A stretch of 64,000 nucleotides of DNA from Ruditapes philippinarum (taxonomy: Eukaryota), in assembly GCF_026571515.1 (NCBI RefSeq), contig NW_026862101.1, forward strand, positions 434,001-498,000, read 5' to 3'. The notes beneath the pieces were generated by a model. That model saw nothing but the letters and a program-made list of their open reading frames with translations. It made no database searches and was not told where the DNA came from. Position 1 is the first letter of the stretch, and the number at the start of each line of letters is the position of its first letter. Made by a program: the position numbers and the translations under genes. Shown here in pieces: positions 4,970 to 35,282 of this stretch.

Positions 4970-5842
4970 CTAAAGTGACTGTATTGATCGTGCACTTTGG
5001 TGAAGATTCATATCGTTCCGATTAAGTGAAGACGATTTTATTAATCTCTCAATTGATTTTTCGTCAACTGACTTCGATTTGTTCTTCAATATTACAGTGA
5101 CTGTTAAACCATCTACCCCATCAGACGAAACAGTTCTGTTGTGACTGTTAATAGGTGGTAATTTAGGTACAGACGAGGCCTTTTTGGGTGGAGCCGTTTG
5201 AAAACTACACGTGTTACTTAAACCGGAAGTCAATGACGTCATACTCTGAAAATGTGAAGGTGGATCTTCATATTCGCTAAGTGATCTGACGCTTCGGAAT
5301 CGAATAAGCTTTCCAAACCGGAAGTCACTGTCATGCAACTTAGCAACAGAAAGTCTGTCTATCATGTCTTGAACTTGTTGTGGTGTCTTTTTCGAATGCT
5401 TCCTTCTGGCGGATATTGATTCATGGGAATCACAATATGAACACCTTCTAAATGAATCAATCTTTTGTTTATTTTGATTGTCTTTGTTTGCTGTCGATAG
5501 CTTCTGCTCTTCTTCATTGTCATCCTCATTCCGCCTTGTAATTTTTCTGAATGGATAAAGCCTGTTAACCAAGGAGTCTACAGTTTTCCGCGGAAGTGAC
5601 CTTAGCGCAGGCGCACTAGGTAGGACAATGTCGTATTGCTGCGAATATTCGAAACATTTTCGTGGTAATTTTGACGCTCGTCTTTTAATCTGGGCTTCTT
5701 TTACTCGATCTAGAACAGTCAACTGATTTGGATTTTCTCGAAAATCATATTTATCTAATGCTATTTTCAAGTTTCGCTTTGCTTGGCGCCTCTTTTTCTT
5801 GTCTTTTGAACTTCCGCTTGAATATTCGAAACTTGACGTCAT
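4970..5842 (-). CDS. Cluster gene A: uncharacterised basic protein, 290 aa, single coding exon (PRAPAF/VxRL family)
   Basis: Long ORF in AT-rich DNA; first ATG at 5842 (the track starts at a GTG). Contains the family motif FEYSQQYDIVLPSAPALRSLPRKTVDSLVNRLY and a second repeat, KKTPQQVQDMIDRLS. Confidence 0.85.
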   Translation of the reverse strand: MTSSFEYSSGSSKDKKKRRQAKRNLKIALDKYDFRENPNQLTVLDRVKEAQIKRRASKLPRKCFEYSQQYDIVLPSAPALRSLPRKTVDSLVNRLYPFRKITRRNEDDNEEEQKLSTANKDNQNKQKIDSFRRCSYCDSHESISARRKHSKKTPQQVQDMIDRLSVAKLHDSDFRFGKLIRFRSVRSLSEYEDPPSHFQSMTSLTSGLSNTCSFQTAPPKKASSVPKLPPINSHNRTVSSDGVDGLTVTVILKNKSKSVDEKSIERLIKSSSLNRNDMNLHQSARSIQSL

Positions 5843-6835
5843 TATATTGCTTGTCACATCTTATTTGAACAAAATGTTAATTAATATCTTTTTTAACGAA
5901 TAAAAATTGTATACACAAAATAATGTTAAGATATACTATAGTTCCATTTTAACACCTTTATATAAACGTGTCCATTTAATATCAAATTAAAATTGGTTCA
6001 CATTTAGCCATTTCTATTTGGCAGACTGAAAAAGTTTGAACAAAAGAATTGTGTCACGGTGTTGGCGTAATTTTAATGACACTGATATCTAGAGTGGAAT
6101 GAATGATTGAAAAGTTTTACTTCATATTGTTTACACATTTTTCTATTCACTGTATTATTTGAGACATAACTATTGATATAAGATATAAATCCTTTCATAA
6201 TGGGACATAATGAACATGAGATTTTTTTCTTCAAATTTTGTAGTTGAAAAATAATTGTCTAAAACGAATACAGTTCAGTTCTTATATTAGTAACTCATTT
6301 TTTATATGTTTTACTCTCGTTTTTCTCTCTCTTTTTCTGCCGATCACAAATTAACAAAATTGTCTTTAGCTACAAATCCATCACCATCAGCAAATTCGTA
6401 AATTATTGAACGTTAAGGGGAGAAGAAATTAACGTTGTTCGGCATAGTAAGACATTGACAAAAATCTGTACGATAGCTGATTTAAGGTATTGTTATTTGC
6501 TGATGATATTTTTCCAGTTATACCAGTTCGTATATTTTATTCTTAGGCGGTAAATAGTCTAGAAAAGTGGAGATTCTCTGGGAGCAATTGAAACAAAAAT
6601 AAAAAATGAATAATTTACAGTCTATTTGATAAAGTCTGATTGTGAGATGTAATGAATACTACAAATTTAATGTAGTAATACAGTAAGTACGTATGAAATA
6701 GAATGAGACAATTGAAAATTGATGTATCTTTTACATGTATGTCAACGCAAACTTTGGAAAAACGTTTTAATATATTACAAGAAAAGTTAAATATTAACTG
6801 ATTTTCTAGAGTAAACAATACAATTTGAAGAGCAA

Positions 6836-6882
<47 letters not shown>

Positions 6883-6911
6883 AAAAATAAAATATAAATA
6901 AATAAATAAAT
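6836..6911. repeat. (TAAA)n microsatellite
   Basis: Direct reading. Confidence 0.9.
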
Positions 6912-7156
6912 GGAAAAATAAAAGTTAGATTTTTATACAGAATGTAATTATTTTATACAAATAAAAAGATAAATGAAAATAAAATACATAGATATAAAAT
7001 AAAATAGATAGATAAATAAATTATTTTTTTTTAATACAGAATGGAATTGTTTAATACAAATGAAAAGATAAATAAAAACAAAACAAATAAATATGTCACT
7101 TTTGTATCATCTCTTAAGTTACGCCGTTGATGAGAAAACGTTCTTTACCGACTGTA

Positions 7157-7720
7157 TCATTTCTTTTTAGCTTTCCTATTTGAAGTTGCTGACTTTGGTT
7201 GCAAGACAACCTTTTCCCGCTGTCTTAATATAGTGATTTGAGTCTTAGAGCGGTACAGTCTGTCAAACACATTGCTGGTACCATTTTTGTCAGAATCTTG
7301 CTTTCCCTTTGCTTTGTTAGACTCAGATGACGTCACAGGTTTGTCGTCTGTTGCAACAACAGTTTCTGTCGGTTCACTATCCGTTCCTGACGTCTCTTGC
7401 TCTTCTTTAGGTTCATTCGTATCACTTGGACTAGTTAGCCTTTCCACGACATTTTCTACCTTCTTTCTGGAGAGCGTCTCAAATGCTGGCGCACGTGGCA
7501 TCACGGTTTTATATTTGCGATTATATTCAAATGATTTTTCTGGCCATTTAAAAGCCTTTGCTCGTATCATGTTTTCGTGGATTCTGTCCAGGTAATTAAT
7601 TCCGTCATGGGATACAGGTGGTCGAAGGCGATAGCCACTGGACACTATGTTGCCACTATAGATGTGACGGATATCAAGATTTGTGATGTCACGATACGAA
7701 TATCGAAATCCTGTCGACAT
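7157..7720 (-). CDS. Cluster gene B: uncharacterised protein, 187 aa, single coding exon
   Basis: ATG-initiated ORF with N-motif FRYSYRDITNLDIRHIYSG, core motif FEYNRKYKTVMPRAPAFETLSRKKVENVVERLTSP and C-terminal NVFDRLY. Confidence 0.9.
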   Translation of the reverse strand: MSTGFRYSYRDITNLDIRHIYSGNIVSSGYRLRPPVSHDGINYLDRIHENMIRAKAFKWPEKSFEYNRKYKTVMPRAPAFETLSRKKVENVVERLTSPSDTNEPKEEQETSGTDSEPTETVVATDDKPVTSSESNKAKGKQDSDKNGTSNVFDRLYRSKTQITILRQREKVVLQPKSATSNRKAKKK

Positions 7721-8484
7721 TTTGGAATTCTTATGTCACAATTCAGATCACAATAAAACAGTTGATATCCATATTATATTTTTCTCAGCAGAAACGAATA
7801 GCGATGTAAAATCAGTTAAATGTTTTTTCAAAAAGATACTTCCAACAAATATTCTATCCTCAGAACAGTTTTATATTAATTTATCAATTTTATCATAAAA
7901 CGATGCATATATAGAATATACTTCTTTATGACTTTGTAAGTGAACACTGTTTGCATACATTATTTAACGTTACAACTTTTATTCTATTGTACACAGACAT
8001 TGACTTAATTTTCACAGTAGATAAAAACAAATTCCATTGTTTTCAGTTTAAAGCTGTGCGGTGTCGTATTTCATTTGAACGTTTCCACTCAATTAGTTTT
8101 CATTGCCCGTTTGATTCTCTTGTGTTATTTACGAAAGTAATATATGTGTGTCTCGTGCAAATGTTATTATTCTTTTAACAAAACGCGTTTTGTTTTGGAT
8201 TCAATTTTCATATCAATGAAAATTACAAAGAAATTGTAAAATAATTAATAGAGTGACATTTTCGAAACCATTTTCACTCAGGCGGGACGAACGAGAACTC
8301 TGCTTAATGATTGATATTGTAGATGGTATAGTTGTTTATCTCCCTTGTATCGTATTGTTTGCGATACCACTTCTCATTGGCGTGTGTCAACCTTTGAACG
8401 CGATGGACGGCAATATATATGGCACAACAAGAACGCCGGAAGTGCCGGTGTGACTAAACCATTAACCTGCTTGCACTGAGCGTG

Positions 8485-9057
8485 ATAAGCCCTAGCCAGG
8501 CCAGCCTGCATGTTCGTGCCTTCGTCCTTCCGTCCGTCCGAATTTCGTTTCCGCGCTAGTTCCCTGCAACTACTAGCTGGATTTCAACGAAACTGTATGG
8601 GAACCATCAATAGCAATAGGAGATGCGCATATCGTCGCCTTGTTCCGGTCAAGCTCTTTAACTCAGAGTTATGACCCTTGATTAGTTATATAGTATGCAT
8701 ATAGAGCAATAATCGTTTCCGCGCTTCTTCTCTGCAACTACTGGCTGGAATTCAACGAATCTTTATGAAAACCATCAATACCAAAAGGAGATGTGTATAT
8801 CGTTGCTTTGTTACGGTCAGATCTTCAACACAGAGTTATGGCCCGTGATTAGTTATGCAGTATGCATATAGAGCAATATTGCTATTTCTTTTCAACTCCT
8901 GGAATGTTTTCAACAAGACTTTATGGAAACCATCAATACGAAAAGGAAATTTGCATGCTAAGATAAATTTATGTAAATAAAGCCTTATGCCTCCAGCTGT
9001 TGTGTTAGAAATAAGCAGTACTTGGCGGGGGATATAAATTCAACGAAATTGCTTGTT
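8485..9057 (+). mobile_element. Helentron-associated non-autonomous element (HINE/DINE-1-like)
   Basis: (GTCC)n microsatellite at ~8523-8540, about 2.4 tandem copies of a 168-bp core (CGTTTCCGCGC at 8546 and 8714), and a 3' end GGCGGGGGATA...GCTTGTT. Confidence 0.65.
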
Positions 9058-10297
9058 TGAAATAAAAGCTAACGGAACATGGGTATTTGTTTGTAGGAAC
9101 TGCAAGTATTGTAAGGAAACGTTAGCATGAATTATTTAACATTCTGGTGTGATGTTGCATTGATGAAATACTGACATAATTTAAACTAACAAACTACACA
9201 CCTTGTAGTTGAAACAATTTAACCATTTTATAGCTAAGTAATCTTGTATAGATTTTCACCTTAATCAGTCATCATTTTAAGGAAAAGTTTTAGAATATGA
9301 CTTGACTGATAAGCAAAAAGTGCAGACCATGATCAGACGGCAGGGATGTACCGGCTAATATTGGTCAGCACTGGTCGCATGGGTAAAATCTATCGCCGCA
9401 AATACGCTAAGGGTTGAACTATACGGTATGTATATACAATATAATGTTGCGCTTTTCGTAGAGTTACATAATTATTTTGTTCTACATTAAACGTAAGTTT
9501 AAAGTATCATTTTTTAACATCACGTTTATATCCTGAGTTGCTGACGTTCTTATATATTATTTGAAAAATTTCACTTTTGCCACCCATATTATGGTGGCTA
9601 ATGTGTGCCATGTCGGATTTTCGCGCGGCGCTGCGCAAGGCTTCCAGGGAGCAAAAGTACGACATTGCGCAAATCAGCCATCATAACATCAATATCCGAG
9701 TGTTGACGGAATTTCACGGAAGTCTAACAGTGTTTTTTTTTCATTGCTTTTTACTTTAATTATATAATTATAATAAATAAACGTTTCTCTATAACATGTA
9801 TCTATACAATCAGTGAAAAGAGAAACAAAACGATCAATATAAATACGAGAACGTTTTTTAAAACACTACTTTATTTCAACATCTTATCAGGTTATTGATC
9901 ATAATTAAAATTTGAATTTTTTGTAAACTTAAACACTTTAGAAGTGTTTGTTCGTAAATGGTCCAAACCAATTTTTTTTATCTTACTATCTTTTGCGGTA
10001 TTTATCTCTGTTCGATTCAATCTATCAAACTGTTTTGTTTATCCCTACCGCCTAAACTTGCATGGTACAGCAAAACACAAAAGGGTATTTGTGTTAATCT
10101 GCATTTAAATACCATCGTGATCATTAGTGGCTTTTTCACATTTCATCGAACAAATTTGTTAAGTTGTTAAATACCCTTTTGGTATTTAATAGCCCGTGAT
10201 TTGTCATTGAGATAAACATCTTTATTGTCTTGATTTGTATGCTATGATCCGCCTATCTAAGTTTAGCACAATTTAATTGAAGAATGAATGATATCTA

Positions 10298-10835
10298 CGG
10301 AAGTCCGGTAGGGACATTTCATCTTCATGAATTCCCAGTTTCATACGAATTAAACTTCAAAATTCACGTTTTTAAATTCACGAATTCACCTTTGCAACTT
10401 CAACTTAACGAATTCACTTTATACTTCAACTGTTGAAATCATATCGTGAAATAAAAATCGTGAATTCATAAAGTTAAATTCGCAAAGTCGAAATCGTGAA
10501 TTCATGAATTTGAAATCGTGAATTCGTGAAGTTGGAATCGTGAATTCGTGAAGATGAAATCGTGAATTCACGAAGTGGGATTCATGAATTTGAGATCGTG
10601 ATTTCGTGAAGTTGAAATCGCGAATTTGTAAAGTTGAAATCGTGAATTCACGAAGTTAAATTCGTGAAGTTAAAATAGTGAATTCGTGAAGATTAAATCG
10701 GAAATGAGTAAAGTTGAAAGCGTGAATTCATGAAGCTGAAATCGTGAATTTCGTATGTTGAAAACGTGAATTCATGGAATTCATGAAGATGAAAATGGGA
10801 ATTTGTAAAGTTGAAAAGTCCCCGTCGGTCTTTCG
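10298..10835. mobile_element. Non-autonomous TIR DNA transposon with internal ~21-bp minisatellite
   Basis: Imperfect TIRs CGGAAGTCCGGTAGGGAC and GTCCCCGTCGGTCTTTCG flanked by TA. The interior is made of (TCGTGAATTCGTGAAGTTGAAA)-like units. Confidence 0.75.
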
Positions 10836-11376
10836 TAGATATCCCCTTCTGATAATGCTTCTAGATATATTTGTCAGCGCAGTGCTAAAATATTTAAAAA
10901 GACAATTATGATACCTTATAGAAGCACACTATAGTATCACAACAGGCTTTTAAAAATGGTTGACAATAGTAAGGAACATACGTAACATTATAGTATTGTT
11001 GAAATTTTAAGAAAAATGCTTTAAATTACGAAATATTTTCATAATGAAACAATAAACAGTGACAATGATTTAGATGTGTTATATAATAGATATATATAGA
11101 CAAAAGGAATGATTGTACATTGAAAAACGCTGTCAAGATTTGTTAAGAAAGCTTAGTTGCAAAAATGGAACTCTGAAATAAACTTGTATATCTGTTTTTC
11201 GTTATTTTATATCCCTGTCGTTTCTTTCCGGTAAAGTGAAAAAGTAAAGTTTGAGTGTAAAAAGATAACTGAATTAATTCTAAAAACATCACAAGGTTCC
11301 TGAGCTGCGTTGGTGTTTTAAGGAAATCTTAATCAGCGGAACTGCTGTGGATTTTGTTGATTTATATCAATTTTCG

Positions 11377-13053
11377 ATGGCATTTAGCATCGGTTACGTA
11401 GGAGTGTGTCAGAAGAATATTCAGCATCTCTATACCACAAGATCATTAAAAGAACCGGCTAAACGAAAGTCGCCACAATACAAGGTGAGTATAAGGCTTA
11501 AAAGCCCCTGGCCTGCAAACTTGAAACGAAAGAGACTGGCTATTGTCACCAGTATAGAATTTTGAACCAGGTCAGCCTGCACATCCATGCATTCTGTCTA
11601 CGCATTTTTCTGTAATTTGTTTTAAATTCTTGTATTTTGATGCATGCATTGGAATCACTTAAATTTGTTAACGACAGTGCCAAATTCAAAACAGAGCAAA
11701 TCAGTAACTCTAATTCAGCTAGAGGGCGAAATGGTCAATATAAACATCATATACATTCTCTCTTGAATTTGATTCTTTCAGTGTTTGAAAGTTTTGTTTC
11801 AGATTTCTTTACAAATATTTTTTTCAAGACCAGCATTTAACTTACTAGCACTATTCTATTACATAAAGATCTTAAAATATCCCACAACTGTTGTGAATAG
11901 AAATAAGTTGCCTATAACACCAATCTTCGAACAAATATATGATTAAAACACACCCACCATTTTCCAGTTGAATATTTAAATATATACATGTATATATACG
12001 TATATATTAATTGGAGCAAGAATATTGTTAGATAAAGGCCCATTATTCCCAAGAAATGCTTTTATGTATATTTGTCAAAAACATTTTATTTTTCATGTCT
12101 TGTTATAGTTTAGAAAATGTTTCTAATTGGGCAATTACATGCAGTCTTTGTTTTCGGCATTTAGTACATCTATAGTGATGTAATTCTTTATGGAAATCAA
12201 AATACTACTTTGTTTACATATTGCTACTGTTTTTAACAAATAATTTCACATTCAGAGTTACTTTTTAGGTGATAGCGTCTTACAATGATAACGTACAAAC
12301 TTTGTATGGGAATCTGCGTTCTTTATTACTCGTCTATAGTACACGTAAAGTTGGTCCTTTCTTAAAAAATAACTGCCAGTTTTTTTTAATGACACTGATA
12401 TTCATATTGTGTCTATTTATAGTGTGTAGGATTTTTTGCAAATTATATTCACTTTGTGTGAAGTCCAACATTTTTATTTCAAATTAACAAAAATACTGTA
12501 TAGCAATTGTCAATATTTGCACATACGTATATCATATTCAAGCCGAGAACGGGTTTGTCTTATATGATAATTTATAATATATATAGTATGATTAAGAGAA
12601 GCTTTATGAGGTATGCTACAAGTGATACAAACATGTTTTTTTGTTGTTTTTTTCCAGCCTGGGTTTTTGAATGATTTAGACGCAGATAGAATAAAGCGGC
12701 AGAGAAATCGACCATTTATGGAGTACGACTCGAAAAACGACATAGAACTTCCGAAAGCAAAGGCATTCCGAAACATTCCTAAACCGGAAGTGGATGAAAT
12801 TGTCAAGCGTTTGACAATGCCACCAAAAGAAAGATTCAAATTTCAGTATACGGATCACCTTGGTTATAACGATTGGCGGACTGCAAGGGACGAGAAGATT
12901 TATCATTTACGGGAAACGTTGAGCAAATTTGGAGGGAACAAGAGTCACGTGATGCCGCCGGCAGTGAAAGAGGAGGAAAAAACGAACAAGAAAGATAAAA
13001 AACATAAGAAAAATAAAAAACGGAAACACGAGGAATCATTTCCAGAACTATAA
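11377..13053 (+). CDS. Cluster gene C: 167 aa, 2 exons (11377-11484, 12658-13053)
   Basis: Exon 1 MAFSIGYVGVCQKNIQHLY...PQYK ends at AAG|GTGAGT. Exon 2 follows a poly-T tract and CAG|CCT; the phase-0 join is in frame. Core motif EYDSKNDIELPKAKAFRNIPKPEVDEIVKRLTMP; Lys-rich tail. Confidence 0.85.
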
Positions 13054-13929: not shown

Positions 13930-14182
13930 AACTGTGAATTTTTTTTCACTTAATTTTGTGGGCATGAAGTTTCGAAGTTTTCTCACAAAGACCATGCTCG
14001 TAGGTTCTTTAAATCGTGGACTGTCTTTTTTTCTCTCAAAAAAGGTAAAATGTAAATAATATGATGCAAAATGATCTTACAGCAGACGAAATAAAATTTC
14101 GTTGGATATCAAATTCGTGGGATGACCTATCCACGAAAACCACGGAAATAAGTGTTCCACAAATAATAATGATTTTGTAGTA
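13930..14182. mobile_element. Degenerate MITE
   Basis: Imperfect inverted ends (ACTGTGAATT...TTTTGTGGGCA and CCACAAATAATAATGATTTTGTAGTA) with internal TTCGTGG/CCACGAA motifs. Confidence 0.4.
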
Positions 14183-14580: not shown

Positions 14581-14681
14581 AGGTTATATGGCTCTATATA
14601 AACGGTTGTTAGTAAATATAACCTGAGCCGCTAGACGAGGGTTATATTACAAAGAACCGTTTATATACGGTCATATAACCT
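14581..14681. repeat. ~100-bp palindromic hairpin (MITE-like)
   Basis: AGGTTATATGGCTCTATATAAACGGTT...AACCGTTTATATACGGTCATATAACCT. Confidence 0.7.
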
Positions 14682-16417: not shown

Positions 16418-16996
16418 ATGGCGTTCGTTGTGACATATCATAATCTTTCTAAACACAACATTCGGAACTTGTACGGAGGACTTCCGGCGGAAATAAAATG
16501 GCGGACAACAAGTAATAGTAAATCGATTGTCCCAGCGCAAAGGGTACACGAACAGATGAGAAAATCGGCACCACACGAGAAATTTCTGAACGAAAGATAT
16601 TACGAATATGACCCGGAAAACGAAATAAGAATTCCAAGAGCGCCAGCGTTTCAGCAACTGTCGCGTTCAAGAGTGGACGAAATCGTTGACAGGCTGTCAA
16701 GACCAACAGTAAGCAAGAGAAGGAGGGCGTCGGAAGTGTGTGAAAGAGAAGCGCGCCGCGCGTTCATAGAAACCTGCCGGAAATGCCGGGCGTTGTCTGC
16801 TCAACCAAAGGCAAGCCGACAGAGAGCAGACGAAATTACAGAACGGCTTATATTGCCAACAGTGACAAGCAATGTGCGGAAAAGTATGAGAAGTCTTGGA
16901 GAGTTTGATGTGCCGGAAGTACGTGATGCGTGCGATAAGTGCTCACTTACTCCGTCAAATAGATTTGCAAAAGAGTTTAGCATTTACAATATATAG
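16418..16996 (+). CDS. Cluster gene D: uncharacterised Arg-rich protein, 192 aa, single coding exon
   Basis: ATG at 16418 (AAACATGG context). N-motif FVVTYHNLSKHNIRNLYGG; core EYDPENEIRIPRAPAFQQLSRSRVDEIVDRLSRPT; second repeat KASRQRADEITERLILPT; two CxxC motifs. Confidence 0.9.
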   Translation: MAFVVTYHNLSKHNIRNLYGGLPAEIKWRTTSNSKSIVPAQRVHEQMRKSAPHEKFLNERYYEYDPENEIRIPRAPAFQQLSRSRVDEIVDRLSRPTVSKRRRASEVCEREARRAFIETCRKCRALSAQPKASRQRADEITERLILPTVTSNVRKSMRSLGEFDVPEVRDACDKCSLTPSNRFAKEFSIYNI

Positions 16997-22494: not shown

Positions 22495-24910
22495 TTATGC
22501 AATTTCCGTCATTTGTCGTCTGGTTTGATATTCGCGCATGCGCGATGACTGGGTTGGGCGTGTCATTCTCTCGGTAAGCATCGTCTGTTCCCGCTCATCG
22601 ATCTTTTGAAGTCCGAGGTATTTCGAATGGTTTCTTGACTTGTCATCTAACATTGCGTTGACACTTTTTGAAGAAATGCCTATAATGTGAAACAAATGAA
22701 TAAAAGTAAATTAGGCGTAGAGTAATTCTAATTGCCCACGATGGACCAGCAGGAACTTTACAACAACGGTTACAGTTCTTTCAAAAGTAAGAATTCACGA
22801 TAGATATAATATCCATAGACCCACATCTCTCAGCAACAACTCAAAGTATCGTTGCTCTTCAGAGGCTGTAGTGTATTTTCATTGCGTAGAGTTAAGTCTC
22901 GGCCCCGTAGTAAGGTAGCATGGATATTTCAATCAACTATTGGCGGGGGAGAAGCAGAAGTGTCATTAATGGGGTTTGATCACAAATGGACCAAGATTTA
23001 ACCATCAATGTGTGTTCGTAAGAGCTGAATTTTGTTGTATGAAATGTTACTTTTAGCGAACTTGATAAGCAAAGAAAAGACTTTTAAGATTTTGTTACAA
23101 AAAAGTTGCATAACAATGAATACTACAATCACAAAATCTCATTCTTATTTTTCACAGCTACCTGATCTCCTCAGCAATTATGCTTCGCATTTAAACTTCT
23201 GACATAATGAGGCGACATATTGGAACTACATTCAGTCACGTGGTAAAATGGAAGCCTCGATGAGCCACCTTTGTGGCAAGAGTGATAGAGATACGTTTCT
23301 TATGATGGGTAAGTAAAGATAACAGTCACTGTGGTATTTAAAAATCGGTAACAATGGGAAAGAGTATTTCATTGTAATTGAATCTTAGAAATCTTTCCTG
23401 CATTGATTTGTGTCAGTATCAACCTCTTTTCTCTTCACAAGTATTTGTCAACTCCTTCACAATCAATTATTTTGGCGGGGAAGAGGAACAAATCTGCGTT
23501 TTAACACAATTTCCAAAACCGAACAGTCACGGCCGATTCATATCTTAAACAAAAGGCCTTATAACTCGGGCAAATTGCGTTGGTGCTTTCATGGTGTTTA
23601 ACGACCCGAAGTATACGGGAACAGCCGATGGTTTACGACTGTTTTCACAAATGTTGTTATTAAGGCTACTTTCGGAACAAACTTGACAAAAAGGTCATAA
23701 TTTAAGGGAAAGGAAACTTATACGTGTAAAAATTATACCCGGATTTACCTTGACTTGCTATTGTGGGCGTGGTTAGGCGGGAAACCACACCGTTTACTTC
23801 ATGACGTGAAAGTATTCGGAACGCTGGAGCACGTGGTATGAGACAGCTATATTCTGGAACAAACTCGGAAGACTTGAGCACGTAAGTCTTCTGTTGATGA
23901 TTTTCCTCCTGAAATTAGAATATAGAAAAAATGTGGACGATTCTTTTAAAGGGACTCTACTGAGTGGTTTTTTTTTGAAGTGATGAAACTGGAAATAATT
24001 TTATCAAAATTTATGTTCCGTTTCATATAGGCGTAGACCAATATCGTGTATACAAATTTATTTAAGATCATTCGCTCTCTCTCCGATTTTCAAAATGATA
24101 GTTCTAATTATGTAAAATAATTCACAAAATTGAAAAGCATTGTAAAGAATAACACAACAATGTGATTCCAATTAATTTTCTGAATGTTTTATTAGTTATC
24201 TTGTTCATATATTTATTTTAAAGTGCCCAAACTTATCTATGTAAGGAATTCTTCTTTTATGATTTTAAGTTTTTTTCCTAAGTGAAGTTCCTTTAGAAGC
24301 AAAATTAAAAAAAACAGCGGACTATTGTTAAAATCAAATTTAAGGACAATATCTGCTTACAGAGGTAGCAATAATTTAAACAAATGTAATTCAATATAAA
24401 CTTTATAACTTTACTGGTCTCAGAATGATTTATCATAATTTTTTACATGAATTTTATAACGGGACATACTGTTCATTTTGTCCTAACCCTTAGCCTGCTG
24501 GGGCCAACCGATTCTTACCCATGCGACAAGTACAGACCCAGGTCAGCCGACACATCCGTGTCCTCTGATCATAGTTTACACTGTTTATTATTCAGTCAGT
24601 ATAGAAATTCGAATTTTGAAACTTCCCCTATAGATACTAGATGGTTTTGTCCGGATTAAAAGATGGATATGTCCATTTAAGATATATTTATCATGTCAAG
24701 TGTTTACTAATCAGTACTTATTGTGCATCCTTTTTCAATAAACGATCTTAAAGGTATAAATAAGTGAAAGATACAAACCTTAATCTTGAGTTGATCTTGT
24801 GTAGGATACGGTTTGGTGTGCCGGTATCTGAGAACCTGGGGGAACCCACTGTAAATGTGTTTTAAATCCCGGCTTAAGATTGAATTAAACGATGTCTTGA
24901 ACTCTCCCAT
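22495..24910 (-). CDS. Cluster gene E: 158 aa, 3 exons (24910-24779, 23908-23749, 22679-22495)
   Basis: GT-AG introns of phase 0 and 1 give an open frame: MGEFKTSFNSILSRDLKHIYSGFPQ...LKIK|EENHQQKTYVLKSSEFVPEYSCLIPRAPAFRILSRHEVNGVVSRLTTPTIASQG|ISSKSVNAMLDDKSRNHSKYLGLQKIDEREQTMLTERMTRPTQSSRMREYQTRRQMTEIA. Exon 1 and 2 sizes (132 and 160 nt) match gene F. Confidence 0.9.
24484..24707. mobile_element. Abundant ~200-bp MITE family with TAACCCT...AGGGTTAA-type ends; other copies at ~9220-9418, ~19113-19210, ~20050-20146, ~33297-33500 and ~42645-42825
   Basis: Recurrent internal motifs (CAGACC..GATCAG, GCACTG, GATGGA...CATTTAAGATAT) found in both orientations. Confidence 0.5.
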
Positions 24911-26270: not shown

Positions 26271-28039
26271 CCCCAACCCTTAAAGGCAACCCCTCAGCGT
26301 CAAGGGGATGCATTTTCGCATTATAACATATCCCTTGCGACCATAGGTTCGGGCATGTGTTTGACCGCTTGTATTGTCGAAAACAACTGAATATAACAAA
26401 GAATCATAAAGATAAGCTCTGTCTTGAAAAAGTCACTTGGCGTAGGTGAAAAACGGGTGTTTTTTATAGCTAAGGTTAAGATCTATAGCTATATTTATGT
26501 ACATTAAATGTCATGTGACTATTGTATAGTATATTTAAATTGTACAAATTGTAAGATGATGTACCATGTACAAATCTTGAATAAAATTTCTGTTCTGTTC
26601 TGTTCTGTTCTTGAATGATCCGAGAAAGTTTAGTAAATAATATTATAATCCTCACTTTTAAAGTACTGACAAGAAAAATAAGGGGAATTTATATTGAATT
26701 ATAATAAACAGAAAATAGAATATAGTTCGTTTATAAAAATCATTTCAATATAATTATACAAACGTAGATTTATACAAATTGCCAATTTTGAGACAAATGT
26801 TTTGTTTCTTTTTATTACAGTCCTTTTAACTTCCCCACAACTAAATTTTAGATCATTCCAAATGTTCTTTTTAAAAAGACAGAGCGAGTCGCCTCTGAGC
26901 ATGAATATGGATGAGCAATTGATTTTCAATTTTTCAAAAATCACAACATAATAATCATATAGTCTCCACGTATAAATATCTTCATTTTTTTTTCTTAAAA
27001 AAAAGATGTAGTGACATTTTTCAATTTTATTTTACATTTGACAAAATCAAGAAATGTTAAAAAAATGCATTGCTGTCATTATTATATCTGGTTCATCCCT
27101 ATAACGGCCTCGACATTTTTTTAGCAGAAAGATCCCTTGATATCGCCTCAGCCAGTGTAAAATCCTCTCATATACTATAATAACTATTACTTATATTGCA
27201 TGAATATCGAGATAACACTTTTTTTAGTGTCAAGTCAAAGCCATTAGTACCAGCGTGTAGGAAAGGACAAGCCTTATTAAACCTGGGTTTACAAGTATCA
27301 TAGCATTGCTGAATTGCTCTTAAATTTTCCATACAGGTCGGCATTTATGAAGTGTAAAAGTTTACAAATCAAAATAACACTACTTTACTGATGAAATAAA
27401 ATACTATCGTCGTTATTTATTATGTGCATAAATCAAATCATTTTGTCAAAAGCACTTGTGGCCCTCTTCTTTCACCTCGTGAGTGGTATGTTACCATGTG
27501 AATTATTGTTTATAACATGATTAGGGTCATGCCAAAGTCCTTAAATTATAAGAGTGGTGTTTCTTTCCTTGAGATCGAGTACCGCGTTCGCGGAATTATC
27601 GCTATACCAAATTAAAAAGCAAGGACATATTTGGTTAAAAATAATTTTATTCTATGAACTCTTAAATGTGTGGGTGTTTAATAGAAAAGACACTCTTTGT
27701 TGAAATCTTTTGAGGAACGAACATAGGGACCAGAAAATAAAATTAGAACTTGCAGTTTTGAAAAATGTTTGGTATATTACAATAATTGACAAGTTATCTT
27801 TTGTCCCGAAATCGCGCTTAATTTTTTAAATGGATACCAATTTTGTAATTATCCTTCATCAATTTTACGAATACCTCAATAAAATTTTCAAGTTAGTCAA
27901 CAGAATAGAGCCTGACCAGACTGCATGGTTTCGTTTAATTTACTATTCCAAATACAATATATAAGATAAACAAAGTTTATACAAGTATAGAATAATACAA
28001 ATTGGTTGGGCAACAAGTACAACCAAAATTACATTTAAT

Positions 28040-28274
28040 GAGCCGCGTCATGACAAAACCAACGTAATAGGTTTGCGACCAGCATGGAGCCAGACCAGCC
28101 TGCGCATCCGCGCAGTCTGATCGGGATCCATGCTGTTCGCTATCAATTTCTCTACTTGTTATAGGGTTTGTAAACGAACAGCATGGATTCTGATCAGACT
28201 GCGCGGATGCGCAGGCTGGTCTTGATCCATGCTGGTCGCAAACCCATTACGTTGGTTTTGTCATGACGCGGCTC
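28040..28274 (+). mobile_element. 235-bp long-TIR MITE (GAG...CTC ends, 4-bp AT-rich flanks; Sola-like), copy 1
   Basis: TIRs of about 100 bp starting GAGCCGCGTCATGACAAAACCAAC; flanks TAAT/AAAT. Confidence 0.85.
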
Positions 28275-29568
28275 AAATGTAAATTAATGAATAACACAAT
28301 ATGGAATGCGACAATGATTTTTCGTAATATGACCAGATATAAATTATTAGTATTATTATCTTATAATTCATTAATTCAATGTAACAAATAAAAAGGTTAT
28401 TGTGCCCCACAGGTTGCCGTAACGGTCTCACGTTTGAATAGATTATAAACCGTTACTGTAATTAAATTAAAAGACTTCAGTGTTTTTTATTTTATTTTTG
28501 TGGTGAATGGACCACATAAGCGCCATTAAATGAAAAAGACTAACTCTCCAAATACTTAGACTAAATATAAATGTAACATCATTTATTATTTAAACTCTAA
28601 ACTCTTAGTTGTCTTTAAAACCATCGTGCAGCTGCTGCAAATGAATAAATTAATTGTTAATTTTATAAAGAACATAATTTTTCGAGCAATATTATAGATC
28701 TTTGTTAATAAAGGGTTATACAAACGGTCAATAATCTCAGTAGTAATAAAAGGTAAAGGTATTGTTTATTATCGTGCCACCCCTACCTACTGAAAGGGCT
28801 AGCCATATCTGACTTATGAGACACCTTTTGCTTGCATACCATGTACTAGTCCCAACTCCTACTACTATGCCAGGCGTCAGGCTGATAGAAATTAGTAACC
28901 ATTCATTTTAGCTACATGTACCTCGCATACCTTAACTAATACGAGTAAGAATAATACTATGCATTTCTAAATTGCATTAAGGTGGACCATAAGTAGTGAA
29001 TGCAAATGCATGGATAACCTTATCTAATATGACAGATACCATCAGATGTATATACCAAACCTGTATAGTTCATATTTTTCTGTAAGATTGAAAATTGTGC
29101 CTCACGCTTTGTCAGTATTATATTTATTTGTTTTTTTCTTCTCGATTTTATTTTAATTTTTGTCAATGTTTCCAGTATGTTGCATTAAATACACAAAATT
29201 ACCATTGGCCCATTATGGAACATGATTTACATTTTTTTTGAAACAACTATAAAAATGGTTTCATTATTTATTATGATATATTAATTTATCATGATGTTGC
29301 ATGTTACCTCTGTTTACCGTAGTAGGCTTACTTAACGCGGGAAACCATTTCCTGGAGAGTACTCGGAACGTTGGAGCACGTGGAATGTGACAGCTGTATT
29401 TTAGACGTTTTTAGCACGTGGGGGACCAAGATGCTCGTCGTCCTAAACAAAGACAACCCAGTCGGTTGAAAAGTTTGTAAAGTCCCCATGAATAGCACTC
29501 AAGAGTCAACTTTGATATTTTATTTCAGAACTTCTAACATACCGTATATTCTCTTATGCAGTAATAAC

Positions 29569-29613
<45 letters not shown>

Positions 29614-29768
29614 TGTTAAATTGTGACCGATGTTCTTTCTCTACAGTTCAATATAGTTTCTATGTCTATGATGTAATCATACCTCTTATAAATATCTTTA
29701 GCTCTGCACAACGCCTAGCATGCATATGTGGAGTTGCTCCTCTAAAAATTGGTCGTTAGAGAATATAT

Positions 29769-30003
29769 GAGCCGCGTCACGACAAATCCAACGTCATGCG
29801 TTTGCGACCAGCATGGTTTCAGACCAGCCTGCGCATCAGCGCAGTCTGATCAGGATCCATGCTGTTCGCTTACAAACCCTATAACAAGTAGAGAAACTGA
29901 TAGCGAACAGCATGCATCCTGATCAGACTGTGCGGATGCGCAGGCTGGTCTGGATCCATGCTGGTCGCAAACCCACTATGTTGGTTTTGTCTTGACGCGG
30001 CTC
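29769..30003 (-). mobile_element. Same 235-bp MITE, copy 2 (spacer inverted)
   Basis: ATAT on both sides. An empty site is visible in the duplicated segment at ~30951-30970. Confidence 0.9.
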
Positions 30004-30859
30004 ATATTTTAATTGTAGAAATAACATTAAAGAAAGATGAGCTGCATGTCCTTGTTAAATGTCCACTGTATTCGCAAATAAGAGATGCAGCAACATTATG
30101 CAGATTTTTTTAATAAAGGGCTATACAAACGACCAGCAATCTCAGTACTATTAATAGTAATAATACTATTTAAATTCTAATTTGCGTTATGATGGACCAT
30201 AAGTAGTGATTCCTAAACGACGGATTACCTTATTAAATATGAAAGATACACTTCCTATCAGATGTATATACCAATCCCGAATAGTGCATAAATATTTTAC
30301 AAAAGCCATAATCTTTATCATTCTGCATGATTAAGAATTGTGCCTCACACTTTGTTAATCAGTATCATATTTATTTGCCTTTTTCTCGATTTTGTTTTAA
30401 TTTTTGTAAATGTTTCTGGCATGTTGTATTTAATACACAAAACTACCAATAGCCCATTGTGGACCATGATTTACAAATTCTTAAACGATTTTCAAAGTGG
30501 TGTCATTAATTGTTATGATATATTAATTTTATCATGATGTTGCAATGTTACCTCTTTCTACCGTAGTAGGCTTAGTAACGCGGGAAACCATTGCATCCAT
30601 TTCTTCACTGGTGGAGAGTATTCAGAACGCTGGAGCACGTGGTATGTGACAGCAGCTGCTGTATTTTTGACGTTTTGAGCACGTGTGGGACAAAGATGCT
30701 AGTCGTCCTAAACTAAGATAACCCAGTCGGGTGAAAGTTTGTAAAGTCCCATAAATAGCACTCAAAAGTCAACTTTGTTTTGTTATTTTATTTCAAAACT
30801 TTTAACATACAGTTCAATATAGTTTCTATGTATCTGATGCAATCATATCTGTAATGTAT

Positions 30860-31446
30860 TACTTTAGCTCTGCACAACGCCTAGCATGCATATGTGGAGT
30901 TGCCCCTCTAAAAATTGAGACTGGTCAAAGTGAAGCTTTACCAGTTAATGAGAGAATATGTTTTAATTGTTTGTAGATCAGCTACATGTCCTTGTTAAAT
31001 GTCCACTTTATTCGCAAATAAGAGAGGCGCTTTATATCGACGTGTGTACAACTAATAACATATTTCTAATGTTTAGTGATAATGAGAAATTCATATATTT
31101 GCTATCAAATGAAAATATTATAAAATATTTTGCCAACGCATGCATTGATATATTATGTGTCTGGCCCAAGTTATTATATAATGGCTAATTTTACTCTGTA
31201 CACATGTATCATAGTCAAAATTTGAATATTAGTTAGCATATGTTTGTTTTATATGTGTAATATAAGTTTTACTGCTACCAAGTATTTCAGCTTTTGACAA
31301 TATTTTAATATTTTTGTAAATAGGCTTTTTATTTATGCTCTCATAACTCATTTAGAGTACTTTGGTACACGTATTCCGTATATTTGTTTATGTATGTACA
31401 TAAGTGAGACTTAAATAAACAAATTGTCTTGTCCTGTCTTGTCTTG
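30860..31446 (+). mobile_element. 3' fragment of a non-LTR retrotransposon (LINE); partial duplicate at ~29697-30090
   Basis: Degenerate ORF2 C-terminus (ICGVAPLKIETGQSEALPVNERICFNC; LHVLVKCPLYSQIREALY), then an AT-rich 3'UTR, AATAAA and a (GTCTT)n tail. Confidence 0.75.
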
Positions 31447-32903
31447 CAGTAGTTTGCTCTGGTTTCCGAGAAAGATAATTGTTTGAAACGACATCATGAA
31501 TTATTATATTAACTTTAAACTTTGCATGTTATATCGAGATAAGGGGAAGTCATATAAGAAGTAATTTTTAAAAGGTTATATGCATTTTTAAATAAGTCGG
31601 CTCAATAATTATACTTCCTTGTACATTATTTATACGATCAGCAAGTAAAACCCAATTCATGGCGAAAATATATTTCTATATATACATTGTAAATATAAAC
31701 CGACTGATATTTTTTAATAATAGCAGTAAAATTCAATTCATTGCCCATATATAATGCTCGTGTGTTTATTTGATCTAATAAAACGTTTTACCTAAAATGA
31801 AATACAAAACGTGTTGATAAAAAAAGAGATCAATAAAGACGATCACTTAAACTATTTTAACGTAGATTTGAAATGACTACACAGGAACGTTGACTTTATA
31901 GATAAATTAAAAAAAGATATAGAATTGTATAGTAAAGTGTTACAAAATCTGTGTGAAAATAATAAAGACAGGTATTGAATAATTTAAGGGCATTGTCTAC
32001 CTATGATTTGAATTTTAAACCAGTAGTCACGTTATACACTGGGTATATAGTTATATACTGTGTCCGGCTTCCGGCAGGGTCTTTAGATTCAGTTTTGTGA
32101 GGAAGCATTCCAGCTAGTTATGATGTGCTCATGGCTCTACTCAGATGCGCGATTTTGCCAGAAATAAATATGATCAAATAGCTGAGGTTTTCGTCCACCA
32201 GTGAGTCTTGTTACAGGTTCCAAACCTCTACTCATTTGGTCAAATAGTTGAGTCATCGTTTGCGTTTTGCCAATTTGTACTGTTATAGTGATTTAGTATT
32301 TTGTATGTAAGTATCTCTTATAATCTTAAATCCATTTTTACAATATCATAGATATAGGCTTGACTTTTTACAGAAATTTTAATTTATTCGTCTATGAGTG
32401 GTTATGTGCAGTAAAATTTACTCGAAAACCAAAGGCTTAAGAAATTGAAGACAATAAACTTATTATGACCCAAAGGTATTCCCTTTTTTACACAGAACAT
32501 CCGTGTCTCCTGTTTACAAGAAATTTCGTCGTAGATATGTCATGCCAGTAGTTATTTAATACTTAACCGAGTATTTTCAGAGAAAATTATTGATCGTTTT
32601 TTTTCTGTTTAGGTGTATGACACAAACTTTTTAAAGCGAGTGAACGTGAGCCTTAAGTTTTATCTTGGTAAACAGCTATGATTATTGAAAAACATGCAGT
32701 TGTACCTCAAACAATAAATATTGTTGGACCATTACATATTCAACTTAAGTGTATATTTTAGCCATGTTGTGTTAATGAAAACCAACGTTGAGTTTAAATT
32801 ATGTTAGATTATAGTAACTATTTATACAGGAGAAATAGTAATTAGAACTAATATTTTGTTTTTTACATGTAAAGATCTGAAAAATCTCATTTAATTTTGG
32901 ATA

Positions 32904-35282
32904 ATGGGAGAGTTCAAGGCATCGTTTTCTTCTATTCGGAGCGGGGATATTAAACACATTTATAGCGGATCACCTCAAGTTGTTAAATACAGATCTACCA
33001 AACCGTGTCCTAAGAAAGATCAGATAATTTTAAAGGTTTGTAAAAAATAATTTGTACCTTTAAATCCTTTAAATAACAGATAATGTCGTCCGGCACTCTA
33101 TTTTATTGTTTTTATACTTTTTGTGGGCATATTTATGGGTTTAGTTTGTTGTTTTCTTTTAATTTTTGTCGCTTTGTCCGAAGGAGGGGGAGAGTGTAAA
33201 TTTATAAATTATGTTTTCAATAAGAATTACGGTTGCATGAAGTAATGCAATAATTGTACAATTGAAATTTAAATACCGACATGTATAAAATCTTACTTAA
33301 CCCTAACCACGTTAAATATCTTAAATGGACATAGCCTTCTAACTATCTGGACAAAAGCATTTATCAGTTAAAGAAGAATTTCAAAATATGTACTTACTGA
33401 ATAGCAAACAGTGTAGACTATGATCGCAATACATGGGCATGCCGGTTGATCTTTGCCAGCACAGGCAACGTGGATAGAATCCCTTACCGCCAGCAGGCAA
33501 ATTGCAGTTGTATCTTTCTGGTTTAAATTGATAATTGAGAACCAAGTAGAGGAGGGCCAATCACCTACATGTGCTAATAAAACAAAACCTATATTTGCAC
33601 TTATTATAATGCAGGGAATAATCTACTAGTACTTGACCGATTAACTATGAGTATCATACTACAATTTTTGTATTTTCATTTCCCTCGACATAACATCATG
33701 CAAAGTTTATAATCAATATTTTCATTCATAATGTCACCTCAAAAAATCACCTTTATCGAATACACAGAAAATCAATGCATACCAGGAATTGTGCAGTCAT
33801 AAAAAAGATAAAATCAATGATATGATTATACCATAAAAATAGATAATATATTGAACCGTAAAGAAAGGACATCGGTAGGAACTTAAAAATATTTCTTTGA
33901 TTTTCTTTCGCAGCTTATTTGGTCTTAACTGGATAAGAATAAAAAATCTTTTTTCGCATTTTTAATGTTTAACCTGAAAGAAAATAACAAAACAATTTAT
34001 ATACAACATGATCACGCGGATAAATTCACTCTTGAATACGGTTCCTGGGATTTAACAAACTTTCACCCGACTGGGTTGTCTAATTTTAGGACGAAGATCA
34101 GCATCTAGATCCCCACGTGCTGAAAACGTCCGAGTTTGTTCGAGAACACAGCTGTTACATACCACGTGCTCCAGCGTTCCGAGTTCTCTCCAGTGATAAA
34201 GTAGATGAAATGGTTTCCCGCGTTACAAAGCCTACCACGGCAAGCAGAGGTAACATTGTCAACATCATCATAAATATATCATTATAAATAACAACACTTT
34301 ACTTTGAAAGTCTCTTCGAAAAGAAGTTGTAAGTCATGGTCCATGACAGGCCAATGATATCTTTTAAAGCAGATTTTGTGAACTGGATGCACCACACCTT
34401 CACCATTCACAAAACTTGAAAGAAACAAAAACAAAAAATGAAGAAGGCATATCAATGCCGTGCTGATAAACAAAATATGGGACACAATTTATAATCTTGC
34501 AGGATAATGTAGATTAAGACACATATCTATTAAGGACTGATAAGAAGGGTATATATCATATTAAACAAGGTTATCCATACTTTGTCGATTAAATGAATGG
34601 ATTATCAGTTCCCTTTTATGCATTTATCATACAGAATAATACATATACATGGTACAACATAATGATAATATACATTTGTTAACTATTATTACATGTAGTT
34701 TCTGTGAGTTTGACCGTTTTTATGACCTCTTATTAACCTAAATCTATGACATAAAAATAATACAATTCAATCTAACGATTGCTGACTGTGTGGGGGACAA
34801 GCCGTTGTTTCCATGAGAAAGAAACTTTACACTCATCGCTCAGTACTGTTGATTCGAACGGATTCGAGAGTATTTTAATAAACTTATAAATTATAACACA
34901 ATCGAACTAAATTTATTAGCATAAACTAAATAAACTAATAATTCCCTCAGTCACTTTTAACCCAACACAATATTTTACCCCTTACGATTGTCCAATTAAA
35001 TTTACATAACAAACGTGCACCAAATTCTATCAATTATTTATATTGGTCAATGTTCTATCTTTTCTTATTACAGGTATTGCATTAAGAAGTGTAAAAGCAA
35101 TGTTAGATGACAAGTCGACGAATCATTCAAAATATCTCGGTTTACAGAAGATAGATGAACGAGAACAGAACATGCTAAATAAAAGAATTACCTACCCCAC
35201 CCATTCTTCGAGCATGCGCGCATATCTTACGAAGAAAAATCTAGAAGGTGTTAAGGAAAAGAGTTTTGTGCATAATAAATAA
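32904..35282 (+). CDS. Cluster gene F: 166 aa, 3 exons (32904-33035, 34090-34249, 35074-35282)
   Basis: Open frame MGEFKASFSSIRSGDIKHIYSGSPQVVKYRSTKPCPKKDQIILK|DEDQHLDPHVLKTSEFVREHSCYIPRAPAFRVLSSDKVDEMVSRVTKPTTASRG|IALRSVKAMLDDKSTNHSKYLGLQKIDEREQNMLNKRITYPTHSSSMRAYL... Same intron positions and phases as gene E. Confidence 0.9.

What the first reader, a model, noticed from the sequence alone, without database searches (positions are those of the whole stretch)
4970..35282. Cluster of six divergent paralogs plus a pseudogene from a small-protein family I cannot name
Seen: genes A(-), B(-), C(+), D(+), E(-) and F(+) share an ungapped 35-aa block. A: EYSQQYDIVLPSAPALRSLPRKTVDSLVNRLYPF. B: EYNRKYKTVMPRAPAFETLSRKKVENVVERLTSP. 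C: EYDSKNDIELPKAKAFRNIPKPEVDEIVKRLTMP. D: EYDPENEIRIPRAPAFQQLSRSRVDEIVDRLSRP. E: EFVPEYSCLIPRAPAFRILSRHEVNGVVSRLTTP. F: EFVREHSCYIPRAPAFRVLSSDKVDEMVSRVTKP. Flanking sequence is largely diverged except between E and F. C, E and F only emerge after manual splicing. Inference: an old tandem cluster under purifying selection on one motif and still turning over. I do not recognise the motif as a named domain, so it may be an undescribed family.
Basis: partly seen in the sequence, partly recalled or inferred. Interest (0 to 1): 0.88.

Follow-up and report, generated by a model that had tools for sequence, protein, structure and literature searches.

The report
Mollusc-only small basic protein family cluster
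Six neighbouring genes of the Manila clam belong to an old protein family that I found only in bivalves and snails; it is conserved by selection but matches no described family or fold, so it is real and undescribed and its function is still unknown.

Summary
Confirmed. All six 34-residue blocks are in the window exactly as quoted. A profile built only from orthologues of gene D finds the other five at E 7e-16 to 1e-8.

The window is Ruditapes philippinarum. F is RefSeq LOC132717935. A, B and D have intronless coding sequences. C has two coding exons, and E and F have three, all with GT-AG borders. Two broken copies of exon 2 lie between E and F.

The family is much larger than the cluster. 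There are 152 clusters (50% identity) among 1.84 billion proteins. Every named member is a bivalve or gastropod protein, and none carries a functional name (one label, 'filaggrin', looks spurious). About ten members occur in this genome.

The tree splits the six genes into four groups (A/B, C, D, E/F). The C and D groups each sit beside a snail clade, and the E/F clade itself holds snail sequences. The B-C-D order recurs in Mactra. E versus F gives dN/dS of about 0.22.

Three blocks are conserved, not one: an N-terminal block, the hairpin-helix core, and a second copy of the helix-PT module.

Pfam, PDB sequences, Foldseek, VIA-align and paper searches found nothing.

The proteins are basic (pI about 10), are not obviously secreted, and are predicted to have local structure without a compact fold. 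My best functional guess, at about 0.25-0.3, is docking on a periodic acidic partner such as microtubules.

The parts
4970..5842 (-). Gene A: intronless ORF of 290 aa from ATG 5842, stop at 4970-4972. It is a fast-evolving member that has lost most of the N-terminal block but keeps the core block and a second 'DMIDRLS' module.
   Evidence: E 1.3e-08 with the D-only profile. P0019 is 94% identical. Long branch in the tree.
7157..7720 (-). Gene B: intronless ORF of 187 aa.
   Evidence: P0187 100%. Relatives 66% (P0186) and 39% (Mactra 021511) identical; in the tree B pairs with Mercenaria LOC123561517.
11377..11484 (+). Gene C exon 1 (36 codons, MAFSIGY...), GT donor.
   Evidence: (Mactra 021510 is 80% identical over this exon).
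12658..13053 (+). Gene C exon 2 with the core block and a Lys-rich tail; AG acceptor; includes the stop codon. The model is 167 codons in all.
16421..16996 (+). Gene D: intronless ORF, the best-conserved member. It has both helix-PT modules, a KRRRAS site and five Cys (C-x11-C-x2-C ... C-x2-C).
   Evidence: P0001, 192 aa, 100%.
24779..24910 (-). Gene E exon 1 (44 codons).
23749..23908 (-). Gene E exon 2 (core block); the intron that follows is phase 1.
22495..22679 (-). Gene E exon 3 (second module MLTERMTRPTQSS) with the stop codon. The model is 158 codons.
29308..29442 (-). Relic 1: a copy of exon 2 plus flanking intron, 25 nt shorter than F exon 2, with stops in every frame. AG and GT flanks are kept.
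30552..30707 (-). Relic 2: a second copy of the same roughly 600-bp segment. It has TAG at codon 3 and a frameshift inside the block.
32904..33035 (+). Gene F exon 1.
   Evidence: (P0035 residues 1-44, 100%).
34090..34249 (+). Gene F exon 2 (core block).
35074..35282 (+). Gene F exon 3 with the stop codon. The protein is 166 aa and equals XP_060557506.1, LOC132717935.

Best explanation
The region is a tandem cluster of six intact paralogues, plus two exon relics, in Ruditapes philippinarum. They belong to a family that I found only in bivalves and gastropods and that has not been described. The proteins are small (158-290 aa), basic (pI 9.7-10.2) and hydrophilic, and I see no N-terminal hydrophobic signal or membrane segment (by eye; no predictor was run). 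They share three blocks. The first is an N-terminal M-[AS]-F-x-x-[TS]-[YF]-x-x-[IL]-x3-[ND]-[IL]-[RK]-[HN]-[IL]-Y-[SG]-G. The second is the core E-[YF]-x3-[YH]-x3-[LI]-P-[RK]-A-P-A-F-R-x-[LV]-[SP]-x3-[VIL]-x2-[IM]-V-x-R-[LV]-x2-P-T, predicted as a beta-hairpin followed by an amphipathic helix. The third is a second copy of the helix-PT module near the C-terminus. The six genes fall into four groups (A/B, C, D, E/F). At least the C, D and E/F groups probably split before bivalves and gastropods diverged, and the genes have stayed linked. E and F come from a later duplication, A is a rapidly evolving copy, and the exon relics show continuing turnover. Shown here: the genes are real, homologous and under constraint; every named member is a mollusc protein; and no known relative was detected. 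Inferred, at about 0.25-0.3: the proteins are extended and fold on binding, and they dock through the hairpin-helix core and the repeated helix-PT modules on a periodic, acidic partner. Microtubules or axonemes are the leading candidate, because separate mollusc proteins carry four to six tandem copies of the same module.
For: Motifs and significance. Gene models with GT-AG borders. F equals RefSeq XP_060557506.1. A variant identical at 165 of 166 residues sits on contigs of at most 1,049 bp, although the gene spans 2,379 bp, so that contig is most likely a spliced transcript. The same reasoning applies to the E orthologue P0185 on a 950-bp contig. Family size and range: 152 representative clusters at E<=1e-3, and every named hit is a bivalve or gastropod protein. 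Groups. Synteny: Mactra locus tags 021509, 021510 and 021511; proteins P0002, P0031 and P0186 are each listed on a contig of 16,626 bp; Gigantopelta LOC121384733 and LOC121384734 are consecutive. Selection: dN/dS 0.22, bootstrap interval of pN/pS 0.27-0.47. Own genome: about ten members. The internal repeat is real: a module-1 HMM finds module 2 in 21 of 58 members at E<=1e-3, against none in reversed controls. Multi-module relatives: P0126, P0147 and P0152 with four or five matched stretches, and these are also mollusc-only. AlphaFold: pLDDT 75.6 but pTM 0.29, and the hairpin and helix reach pLDDT 88-92. Composition.
Against: I found no RFX X-box within 1.5 kb upstream of any of the six start codons, which speaks weakly against classical ciliary regulation. 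A profile of the family hit no chain of the solved doublet-microtubule structures, nor any other PDB chain. Basic clusters such as KRRR and the Lys-rich tail of C fit nuclear or RNA-binding roles equally well. The tree was built with the 'quick' method and has several weakly supported deep branches.
Confidence: 0.8

Rival explanations
1. The proteins are nuclear. They would be chromatin-, nucleolus- or RNA-binding basic disordered proteins, and the conserved blocks would serve a nuclear partner rather than the cytoskeleton.
For: pI about 10 and 17-24% Lys+Arg. There are NLS-like clusters: KKKRRQAKR in A, KRRRAS in D, and the KKDKKHKKNKKRKH tail in C. D-type members carry CxxC pairs that could bind zinc.
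Against: No known nucleic-acid-binding domain was found. The Cys pattern is confined to the D group. The tandem multi-module relatives fit a periodic lattice better. Nothing here tests localisation.
Confidence: 0.2
2. The family is a very diverged branch of a known filament-binding repeat family, for example THEG/SPMAP2-type repeats or a doublet-microtubule inner protein. In that case it is not new.
For: The module hydrophobic-x-x-hydrophobic-hydrophobic-x-R-L-x-x-P-T looks superficially like the THEG '...R-I-x-x-L-A-x-P-K' repeat (recalled from memory, so a lead only). The proteins have an extended, MIP-like character.
Against: Pfam gave no THEG or other repeat hit, even at E<=10, on the six proteins or on seven multi-module relatives, and none at E<=0.01 on 75 family members. 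The family profile against all PDB chains, including the doublet-microtubule entries, gave only one chance hit at E 1.8. Foldseek's best hit was E 2.1, and VIA-align's best was Z 2.6.
Confidence: 0.08
3. The conserved blocks are short linear motifs for signalling enzymes (a kinase, a phosphatase or a phospho-reader). The proteins would be regulatory adaptors or substrates, not structural binders.
For: An invariant Arg, a frequent Ser/Thr two residues later, and a Pro-Thr follow each helix (R-[LV]-[ST]-x-P-T). D orthologues keep an RRRAS site of PKA type.
Against: The motif fits no consensus I could match from memory (14-3-3, PP1 RVxF, LC8 TQT, SH3). The block is 34 aa long and has predicted secondary structure, which is longer than a typical linear motif.
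Confidence: 0.12
4. The ORFs are decaying or mispredicted and do not encode functional proteins.
For: Two clear relics exist. A is very diverged.
Against: ORFs of 187-290 codons are intact in DNA of 30-35% G+C. D is 83% identical to its Mercenaria orthologue and 52-53% to the Dreissena one. dN/dS is 0.22. Splice sites are conserved. Some contigs are too short to hold the introns.
Confidence: 0.02

Closest known systems
Mollusc multi-module proteins (Mercenaria LOC123549215, Dreissena LOC127838427; the orthologue in this genome is at G000:C5768:179727-185738)
   Same: They carry four to six tandem copies of the same helix-PT module (for example ...LDNIVSRITRPTVASTGG...). The family profile picks them up, and the motif in E and F (RVTKPTTASRG) is nearly identical. 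All named members are bivalves or gastropods and none has a functional name.
   Different: They lack the N-terminal block and the EY...PRAPAF hairpin. They are longer (about 250-430 aa), lie at an unlinked locus, and are themselves uncharacterised, so they give no function.
THEG / SPMAP2 repeat proteins (Pfam THEG repeat)
   Same: Short repeated modules ending in L-x-x-P-[KT] within basic, extended proteins; this is a resemblance recalled from memory.
   Different: The Pfam model does not match any member tested, and there is no shared N-terminal or PRAPAF block. Membership is not supported.
Microtubule inner proteins and other extended filament binders seen in solved doublet-microtubule structures
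   Same: Small, basic proteins with locally confident secondary structure but no globular fold (pTM 0.29).
   Different: No sequence match to any solved chain and no structural match. No X-box lies near the genes.
Taxonomically restricted gene families of molluscs in general
   Same: Confined to one phylum among named hits, expanded in tandem, and annotated only as 'uncharacterized protein'.
   Different: Unlike the secreted shell-matrix or Gly-rich families often reported, these proteins show no obvious signal peptide. Three of the four groups have both bivalve and gastropod members or sister clades, and the local gene order is conserved.

Membership tests
The new family itself (working name: PRAPAF family) | Core block E-[YF]-x8-P-[RK]-A-P-A-F-R-x-[LV]-[SP]-x3-[VIL]-x2-[IM]-V-x-R-[LV]-x2-P | tested here: met
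   Present in all six genes. P73, A75 and R92 are at least 93% conserved over 58 diverse members. A deviates at several positions (PSAPAL, RLYPF).
The new family itself (working name: PRAPAF family) | N-terminal block M-[AS]-F-x2-[TS]-[YF]-x2-[IL]-x3-[ND]-[IL]-[RK]-[HN]-[IL]-Y-[SG]-G | tested here: met
   Clear in B, C (exon 1), D, E (exon 1) and F (exon 1). In A only MTSSFEYS remains, so A is a partial exception.
The new family itself (working name: PRAPAF family) | Second helix-PT module ([ST]-x2-[ED]-hydrophobic-x2-[IL]-x2-R-[LV]-x2-P-T-x2-S-x-[IVL]-R) | tested here: met
   Seen in D (ADEITERLILPTVTSNVR), E, F, B (degenerate) and A (QDMIDRLSVAK), but not clearly in C. The module-1 HMM finds it in 21 of 58 members at E<=1e-3, against none in reversed controls.
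THEG / SPMAP2 repeat family (Pfam THEG repeat) | Match to the Pfam THEG repeat model | tested here: not met
   No THEG hit at E<=10 on the six window proteins or on seven multi-module relatives, and none at E<=0.01 on 75 family members.
Known doublet-microtubule inner or associated proteins with solved structures | Sequence or fold similarity to a chain of a solved axonemal structure | tested here: not met
   Profile against 177,635 PDB sequences: only a ribosomal L5 hit at E 1.8. Foldseek's best was E 2.1. VIA-align's best was Z 2.6, with doublet-microtubule chains no better than unrelated coiled coils.
RFX-regulated ciliary genes | X-box (GTNRCC N0-3 RGYAAC) close upstream of the gene | tested here: inconclusive
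   None within 1.5 kb upstream of the six ATGs. Transcription starts are unknown, so promoters further away cannot be excluded.

The most novel reading that the evidence does not exclude
The hairpin-helix core and the repeated helix-PT module define a mollusc-specific class of microtubule or axoneme binders. The small cluster proteins would be one- or two-module versions, and the four- to six-module relatives would act as lattice-spanning rulers. That would be a lineage-specific addition to the otherwise deeply conserved ciliary or sperm cytoskeleton.
Probability: 0.2. Interest if true: 0.65.

Novelty: categorically new. Interest (0 to 1): 0.45.

Why it matters
The work defines a sizeable protein family: 152 clusters at 50% identity, about ten genes per clam genome, and probably older than the bivalve-gastropod split. 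The family has no Pfam entry, no solved or recognisable fold and no literature, and its genes are currently named only 'uncharacterized protein'. The report gives a signature, four groups and gene models that can be used to annotate mollusc genomes. It also provides a concrete set of candidates (D, the E/F pair and the multi-module relative) for localisation and binding experiments. Lineage-restricted families are common in molluscs and no function is shown, so the immediate surprise for a specialist is moderate.

Tried and rejected
- **Pfam:** scans of the six proteins at E<=10, 75 family members at E<=0.01 and seven multi-module relatives at E<=10 gave only sub-threshold chance hits.
- **PDB sequences:** a profile search gave nothing.
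- **Structure:** AlphaFold models of D and of the 71-aa core were searched with Foldseek and VIA-align wide. The best results were E 2.1 and Z 2.6, so no fold match.
- **ESM Atlas:** only unnamed mollusc and Euglenozoa clusters at scores of 0.89 or less, which is below the lead threshold.
- **Papers:** searches for the motif and for 18 gene identifiers returned no papers.
- **X-box scan:** none near the genes.
- **Complex prediction:** not used. Tubulin binding is only a hypothesis, and a negative result would not be informative.
- **Linear motifs:** an N-myristoylation reading of the MGEF start of E and F was considered and dropped, because Glu after Gly violates the PROSITE pattern as I recall it. 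LC8, 14-3-3, PP1 and SH3 motif readings were considered and did not fit.
- **Spliced models:** dN/dS was summed over whole codons exon by exon. F's full protein came from the database (P0035).


Full report
**Observation**

Within the block the pairs share 11-22 of 34 residues.

To avoid circularity I built an HMM from 15 orthologues of D only (alignment A2). I ran it against all 2,846 stop-to-stop pieces of the window. It found B at 6.8e-16, F at 6.7e-12, E at 1.2e-10, C at 1e-09 and A at 1.3e-08, and it picked up the relics and first exons more weakly. The homology is therefore real.

**Gene models**

- A (5842-4970, 290 aa), B (7720-7157, 187 aa) and D (16421-16996) are uninterrupted ORFs.
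- C has two coding exons: 11377-11484 and 12658-13053.
- E has three: 24910-24779, 23908-23749 and 22679-22495.
- F has three: 32904-33035, 34090-34249 and 35074-35282.
- Every internal border is AG/GT, and E and F share intron positions and phases.

F's exons reproduce P0035 at 100% identity. P0035 is XP_060557506.1, 'uncharacterized protein LOC132717935 [Ruditapes philippinarum]', on a contig of 540,043 bp, the same length as the contig listed for the window's own proteins. The window is therefore Manila clam, G000:C10588:434001-498000.

A variant identical at 165 of 166 residues (P0216) lies on contigs of at most 1,049 bp, although the gene spans 2,379 bp. The E orthologue P0185 (161 aa) lies on a 950-bp contig. 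I infer that these are spliced transcripts.

Spliced models were searched exon by exon by reference. I sent no joined model of C or E to any tool.

**Relics**

Between E and F a segment of about 600 bp is duplicated (28950-29545 versus 30159-30813, 77% identity). Each copy resembles F exon 2 plus adjoining intron at about 71%. The exon-like parts are 29308-29442 and 30552-30707 on the minus strand. They keep the AG and GT flanks but are 25 and 4 nt shorter than F exon 2 and have stops in all frames. I found no relics of exon 1 or exon 3.

**Extent of the family**

D alone finds 190-211-aa orthologues, for example Mercenaria at 83% and Dreissena at 52% identity. A profile of D orthologues plus the window paralogues (A3), scored against 1.84 billion representatives, gave 152 clusters at E<=1e-3 and 73 at E<=1e-10.

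Every hit that carries an organism name is a bivalve or a gastropod:
- Bivalves: Mercenaria, Mactra, Mya, Dreissena, Potamilus, Mizuhopecten, Ostrea, Saccostrea, Pinctada, Ruditapes.
- Gastropods: Gigantopelta, Batillaria, Nucella, Pomacea, Haliotis, Babylonia, Elysia, Physella, Plakobranchus, Bulinus, Biomphalaria.

All are labelled uncharacterized or hypothetical, apart from labels that look spurious for low-complexity proteins ('filaggrin' in Biomphalaria, 'Serine/arginine repetitive matrix protein 2-like' in Plakobranchus).

In the clam genome itself the profile finds the six genes here, a tandem pair on C12330 whose intron appears to split the core block after PRAPAFR, and single genes on C10836 and C8905. 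That makes about ten members.

**Architecture**

Conservation is not limited to the 34-aa block. Over 58 diverse members there are three blocks:
1. An N-terminal block, M-[AS]-F-x2-[TS]-[YF]-x2-[IL]-x3-[ND]-[IL]-[RK]-[HN]-[IL]-Y-[SG]-G. Phe3 is 94% conserved and Tyr19 87%.
2. The core, with P73, A75, P76, A77 and F78 at 82-93%, V90 at 82% and R92 at 98%, followed by [LV]-x2-P-T.
3. A second copy of the helix-PT module, with R143 at 82%, T148 at 82% and R154 at 84%.

An HMM of module 1 finds module 2 in 21 of 58 members at E<=1e-3. Reversed controls gave none at that level; their best was 0.0015. The module is therefore an internal repeat.

D-type proteins add an RRRAS site and a Cys pattern (C108, C120, C123, C172, C175; gastropod D-like proteins have CxxC-x12-CxxC).

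A separate set of mollusc proteins carries four to six tandem copies of the same module without the other blocks. Examples are Mercenaria LOC123549215, with its orthologue here on C5768, and P0126 and P0152. This set too has only bivalve and gastropod names and no functional name.

**Evolution**

A maximum-likelihood tree of 58 sequences (quick method, SH-aLRT support only) gives four groups:
- A C-type clade holding C and Mactra 021510, with the C12330-type genes and Potamilus. It sits beside a gastropod clade of Elysia, Babylonia and Nucella.
- A bivalve D clade (support 96), placed near a gastropod D-like clade in a part of the tree that is not resolved.
- An E/F clade (support 97) that includes Gigantopelta, Nucella, Batillaria and Haliotis as well as Mizuhopecten and Pinctada.
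- An A/B clade together with oyster and scallop sequences. I saw no gastropod member in this group.

Several deep branches are weak. E groups with P0185 rather than with F, so the E/F duplication predates that species split.

Evidence for conserved linkage:
- Mactra locus tags 021509 (D type), 021510 (C type) and 021511 (B type) are consecutive.
- P0002 (D, 81%), P0031 (C, 81%) and P0186 (B, 66%) are each listed on a contig of 16,626 bp.
- Gigantopelta LOC121384733 (D-like) and LOC121384734 (E/F-like) are consecutive IDs on one scaffold.

E versus F, over 157 whole codons summed exon by exon, gives dN 0.24, dS 1.09 and dN/dS 0.22. The pN/pS ratio is 0.36 with a bootstrap interval of 0.27-0.47, and amino-acid identity is 62%. 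Both copies are therefore under purifying selection, although dS is near saturation.

**Comparison with what is known**

- Pfam-A gave nothing above noise for the six proteins, 75 family members or seven multi-module relatives.
- The family profile against all PDB chain sequences gave one chance hit at E 1.8.
- AlphaFold2 with a 58-sequence alignment gives D a mean pLDDT of 75.6 but a pTM of 0.29. That means confident local elements and no compact fold. The elements include helix 39-61, hairpin 62-73 and helix 83-94.
- The 71-aa core alone gives pLDDT 78.8 and pTM 0.38, with the hairpin and helix at 88-92.
- Foldseek against PDB (best E 2.1) and VIA-align against 48,161 representatives (best Z 2.6) found nothing.
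- ESM Atlas returned only unnamed clusters below the lead threshold.
- Four paper searches, for the motif and for 18 identifiers, returned no papers.

The resemblance of the module to THEG repeats is from my memory only, and the Pfam scans returned no THEG hit.

**Mechanism**

What is shown:
- The proteins are basic (pI 9.7-10.2), carry 17-24% Lys+Arg, are Ser/Thr-rich in most members and hydrophilic.
- I see no N-terminal signal-like or membrane segment by eye (no predictor was run), and they are predicted to be extended.

What I infer: such proteins usually fold on a partner. The strongly conserved hairpin-helix and the repetition of the helix-PT module, up to six times in relatives, suggest docking on a repeating acidic surface. 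I rank the options as follows:
- Microtubules or axonemes, about 0.25-0.3.
- A nuclear or nucleic-acid role, about 0.2. NLS-like basic clusters and the CxxC pairs in the D type support it.
- A signalling adaptor or substrate, about 0.1-0.15.
- The rest unknown.

Against a classical ciliary gene: no X-box lies within 1.5 kb upstream of any of the six ATGs. Transcription starts are unknown, so this is weak evidence.

**Verdict**

The family is real, old, under constraint and undescribed. It is a taxonomically restricted family of unknown function, which is valuable for annotation and as an experimental target but not startling. I rate interest at 0.45.

Noticed in passing
window 11-3875: Satellite array with a period of about 85 bp (also 170 and 255 bp higher-order periods), about 45 copies at 73-81% identity, directly upstream of gene A's 3' end. 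G+C is 0.40 against about 0.32 elsewhere.
   Followed up: partly
window 59008-61731 (and 61973-62164; related CA-rich arrays at 57674-58850): A 42-bp satellite with 65 copies at 91% identity and strongly negative GC skew. It is preceded by arrays of 'CACACTGACATGACA' units with periods of 56, 81 and 164 bp.
   Followed up: partly
window 55096-55109: A perfect palindromic RFX X-box, GTTGCCATGGCAAC (0.3 expected by chance in the window), next to a 164-bp tandem repeat at 55118-55581. No gene was assigned to it.
   Followed up: no
window 46718-47038 (-) and 50516-51025 (-): An exon with an FkbM-type methyltransferase domain (Pfam Methyltransf_21, E 9e-11). A 170-aa ORF 3.5 kb upstream on the same strand has a hydrophobic N-terminal stretch and may be the first exon of the same gene.
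   Followed up: partly
window 28038-28285, 29765-30022, 53113-53371: Three copies (84-92% identical, matching in both orientations) of a roughly 245-bp palindromic MITE-like element. One copy sits between the two exon-2 relics, next to a poly-T run of about 50 nt at roughly 29570-29620.
   Followed up: no
L001 (G000:C12330:370500-378500), about 1457-2321 and 5732-6471, minus strand: Two tandem family members elsewhere in the genome whose intron appears to split the core block right after PRAPAFR. The intron positions differ from those of C, E and F, and one of the pair is probably LOC132723487.
   Followed up: partly
window 16421-16996 (gene D) and its orthologues: A Cys pattern specific to the D group (C-x11-C-x2-C ... 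C-x2-C; CxxC-x12-CxxC in gastropod D-like proteins) and a conserved KRRRAS site. These suggest a possible zinc knuckle and a PKA-type phosphorylation site.
   Followed up: no
window 46121-46479: A nearly perfect 31-bp tandem repeat, 11.6 copies at 99% identity.
   Followed up: no
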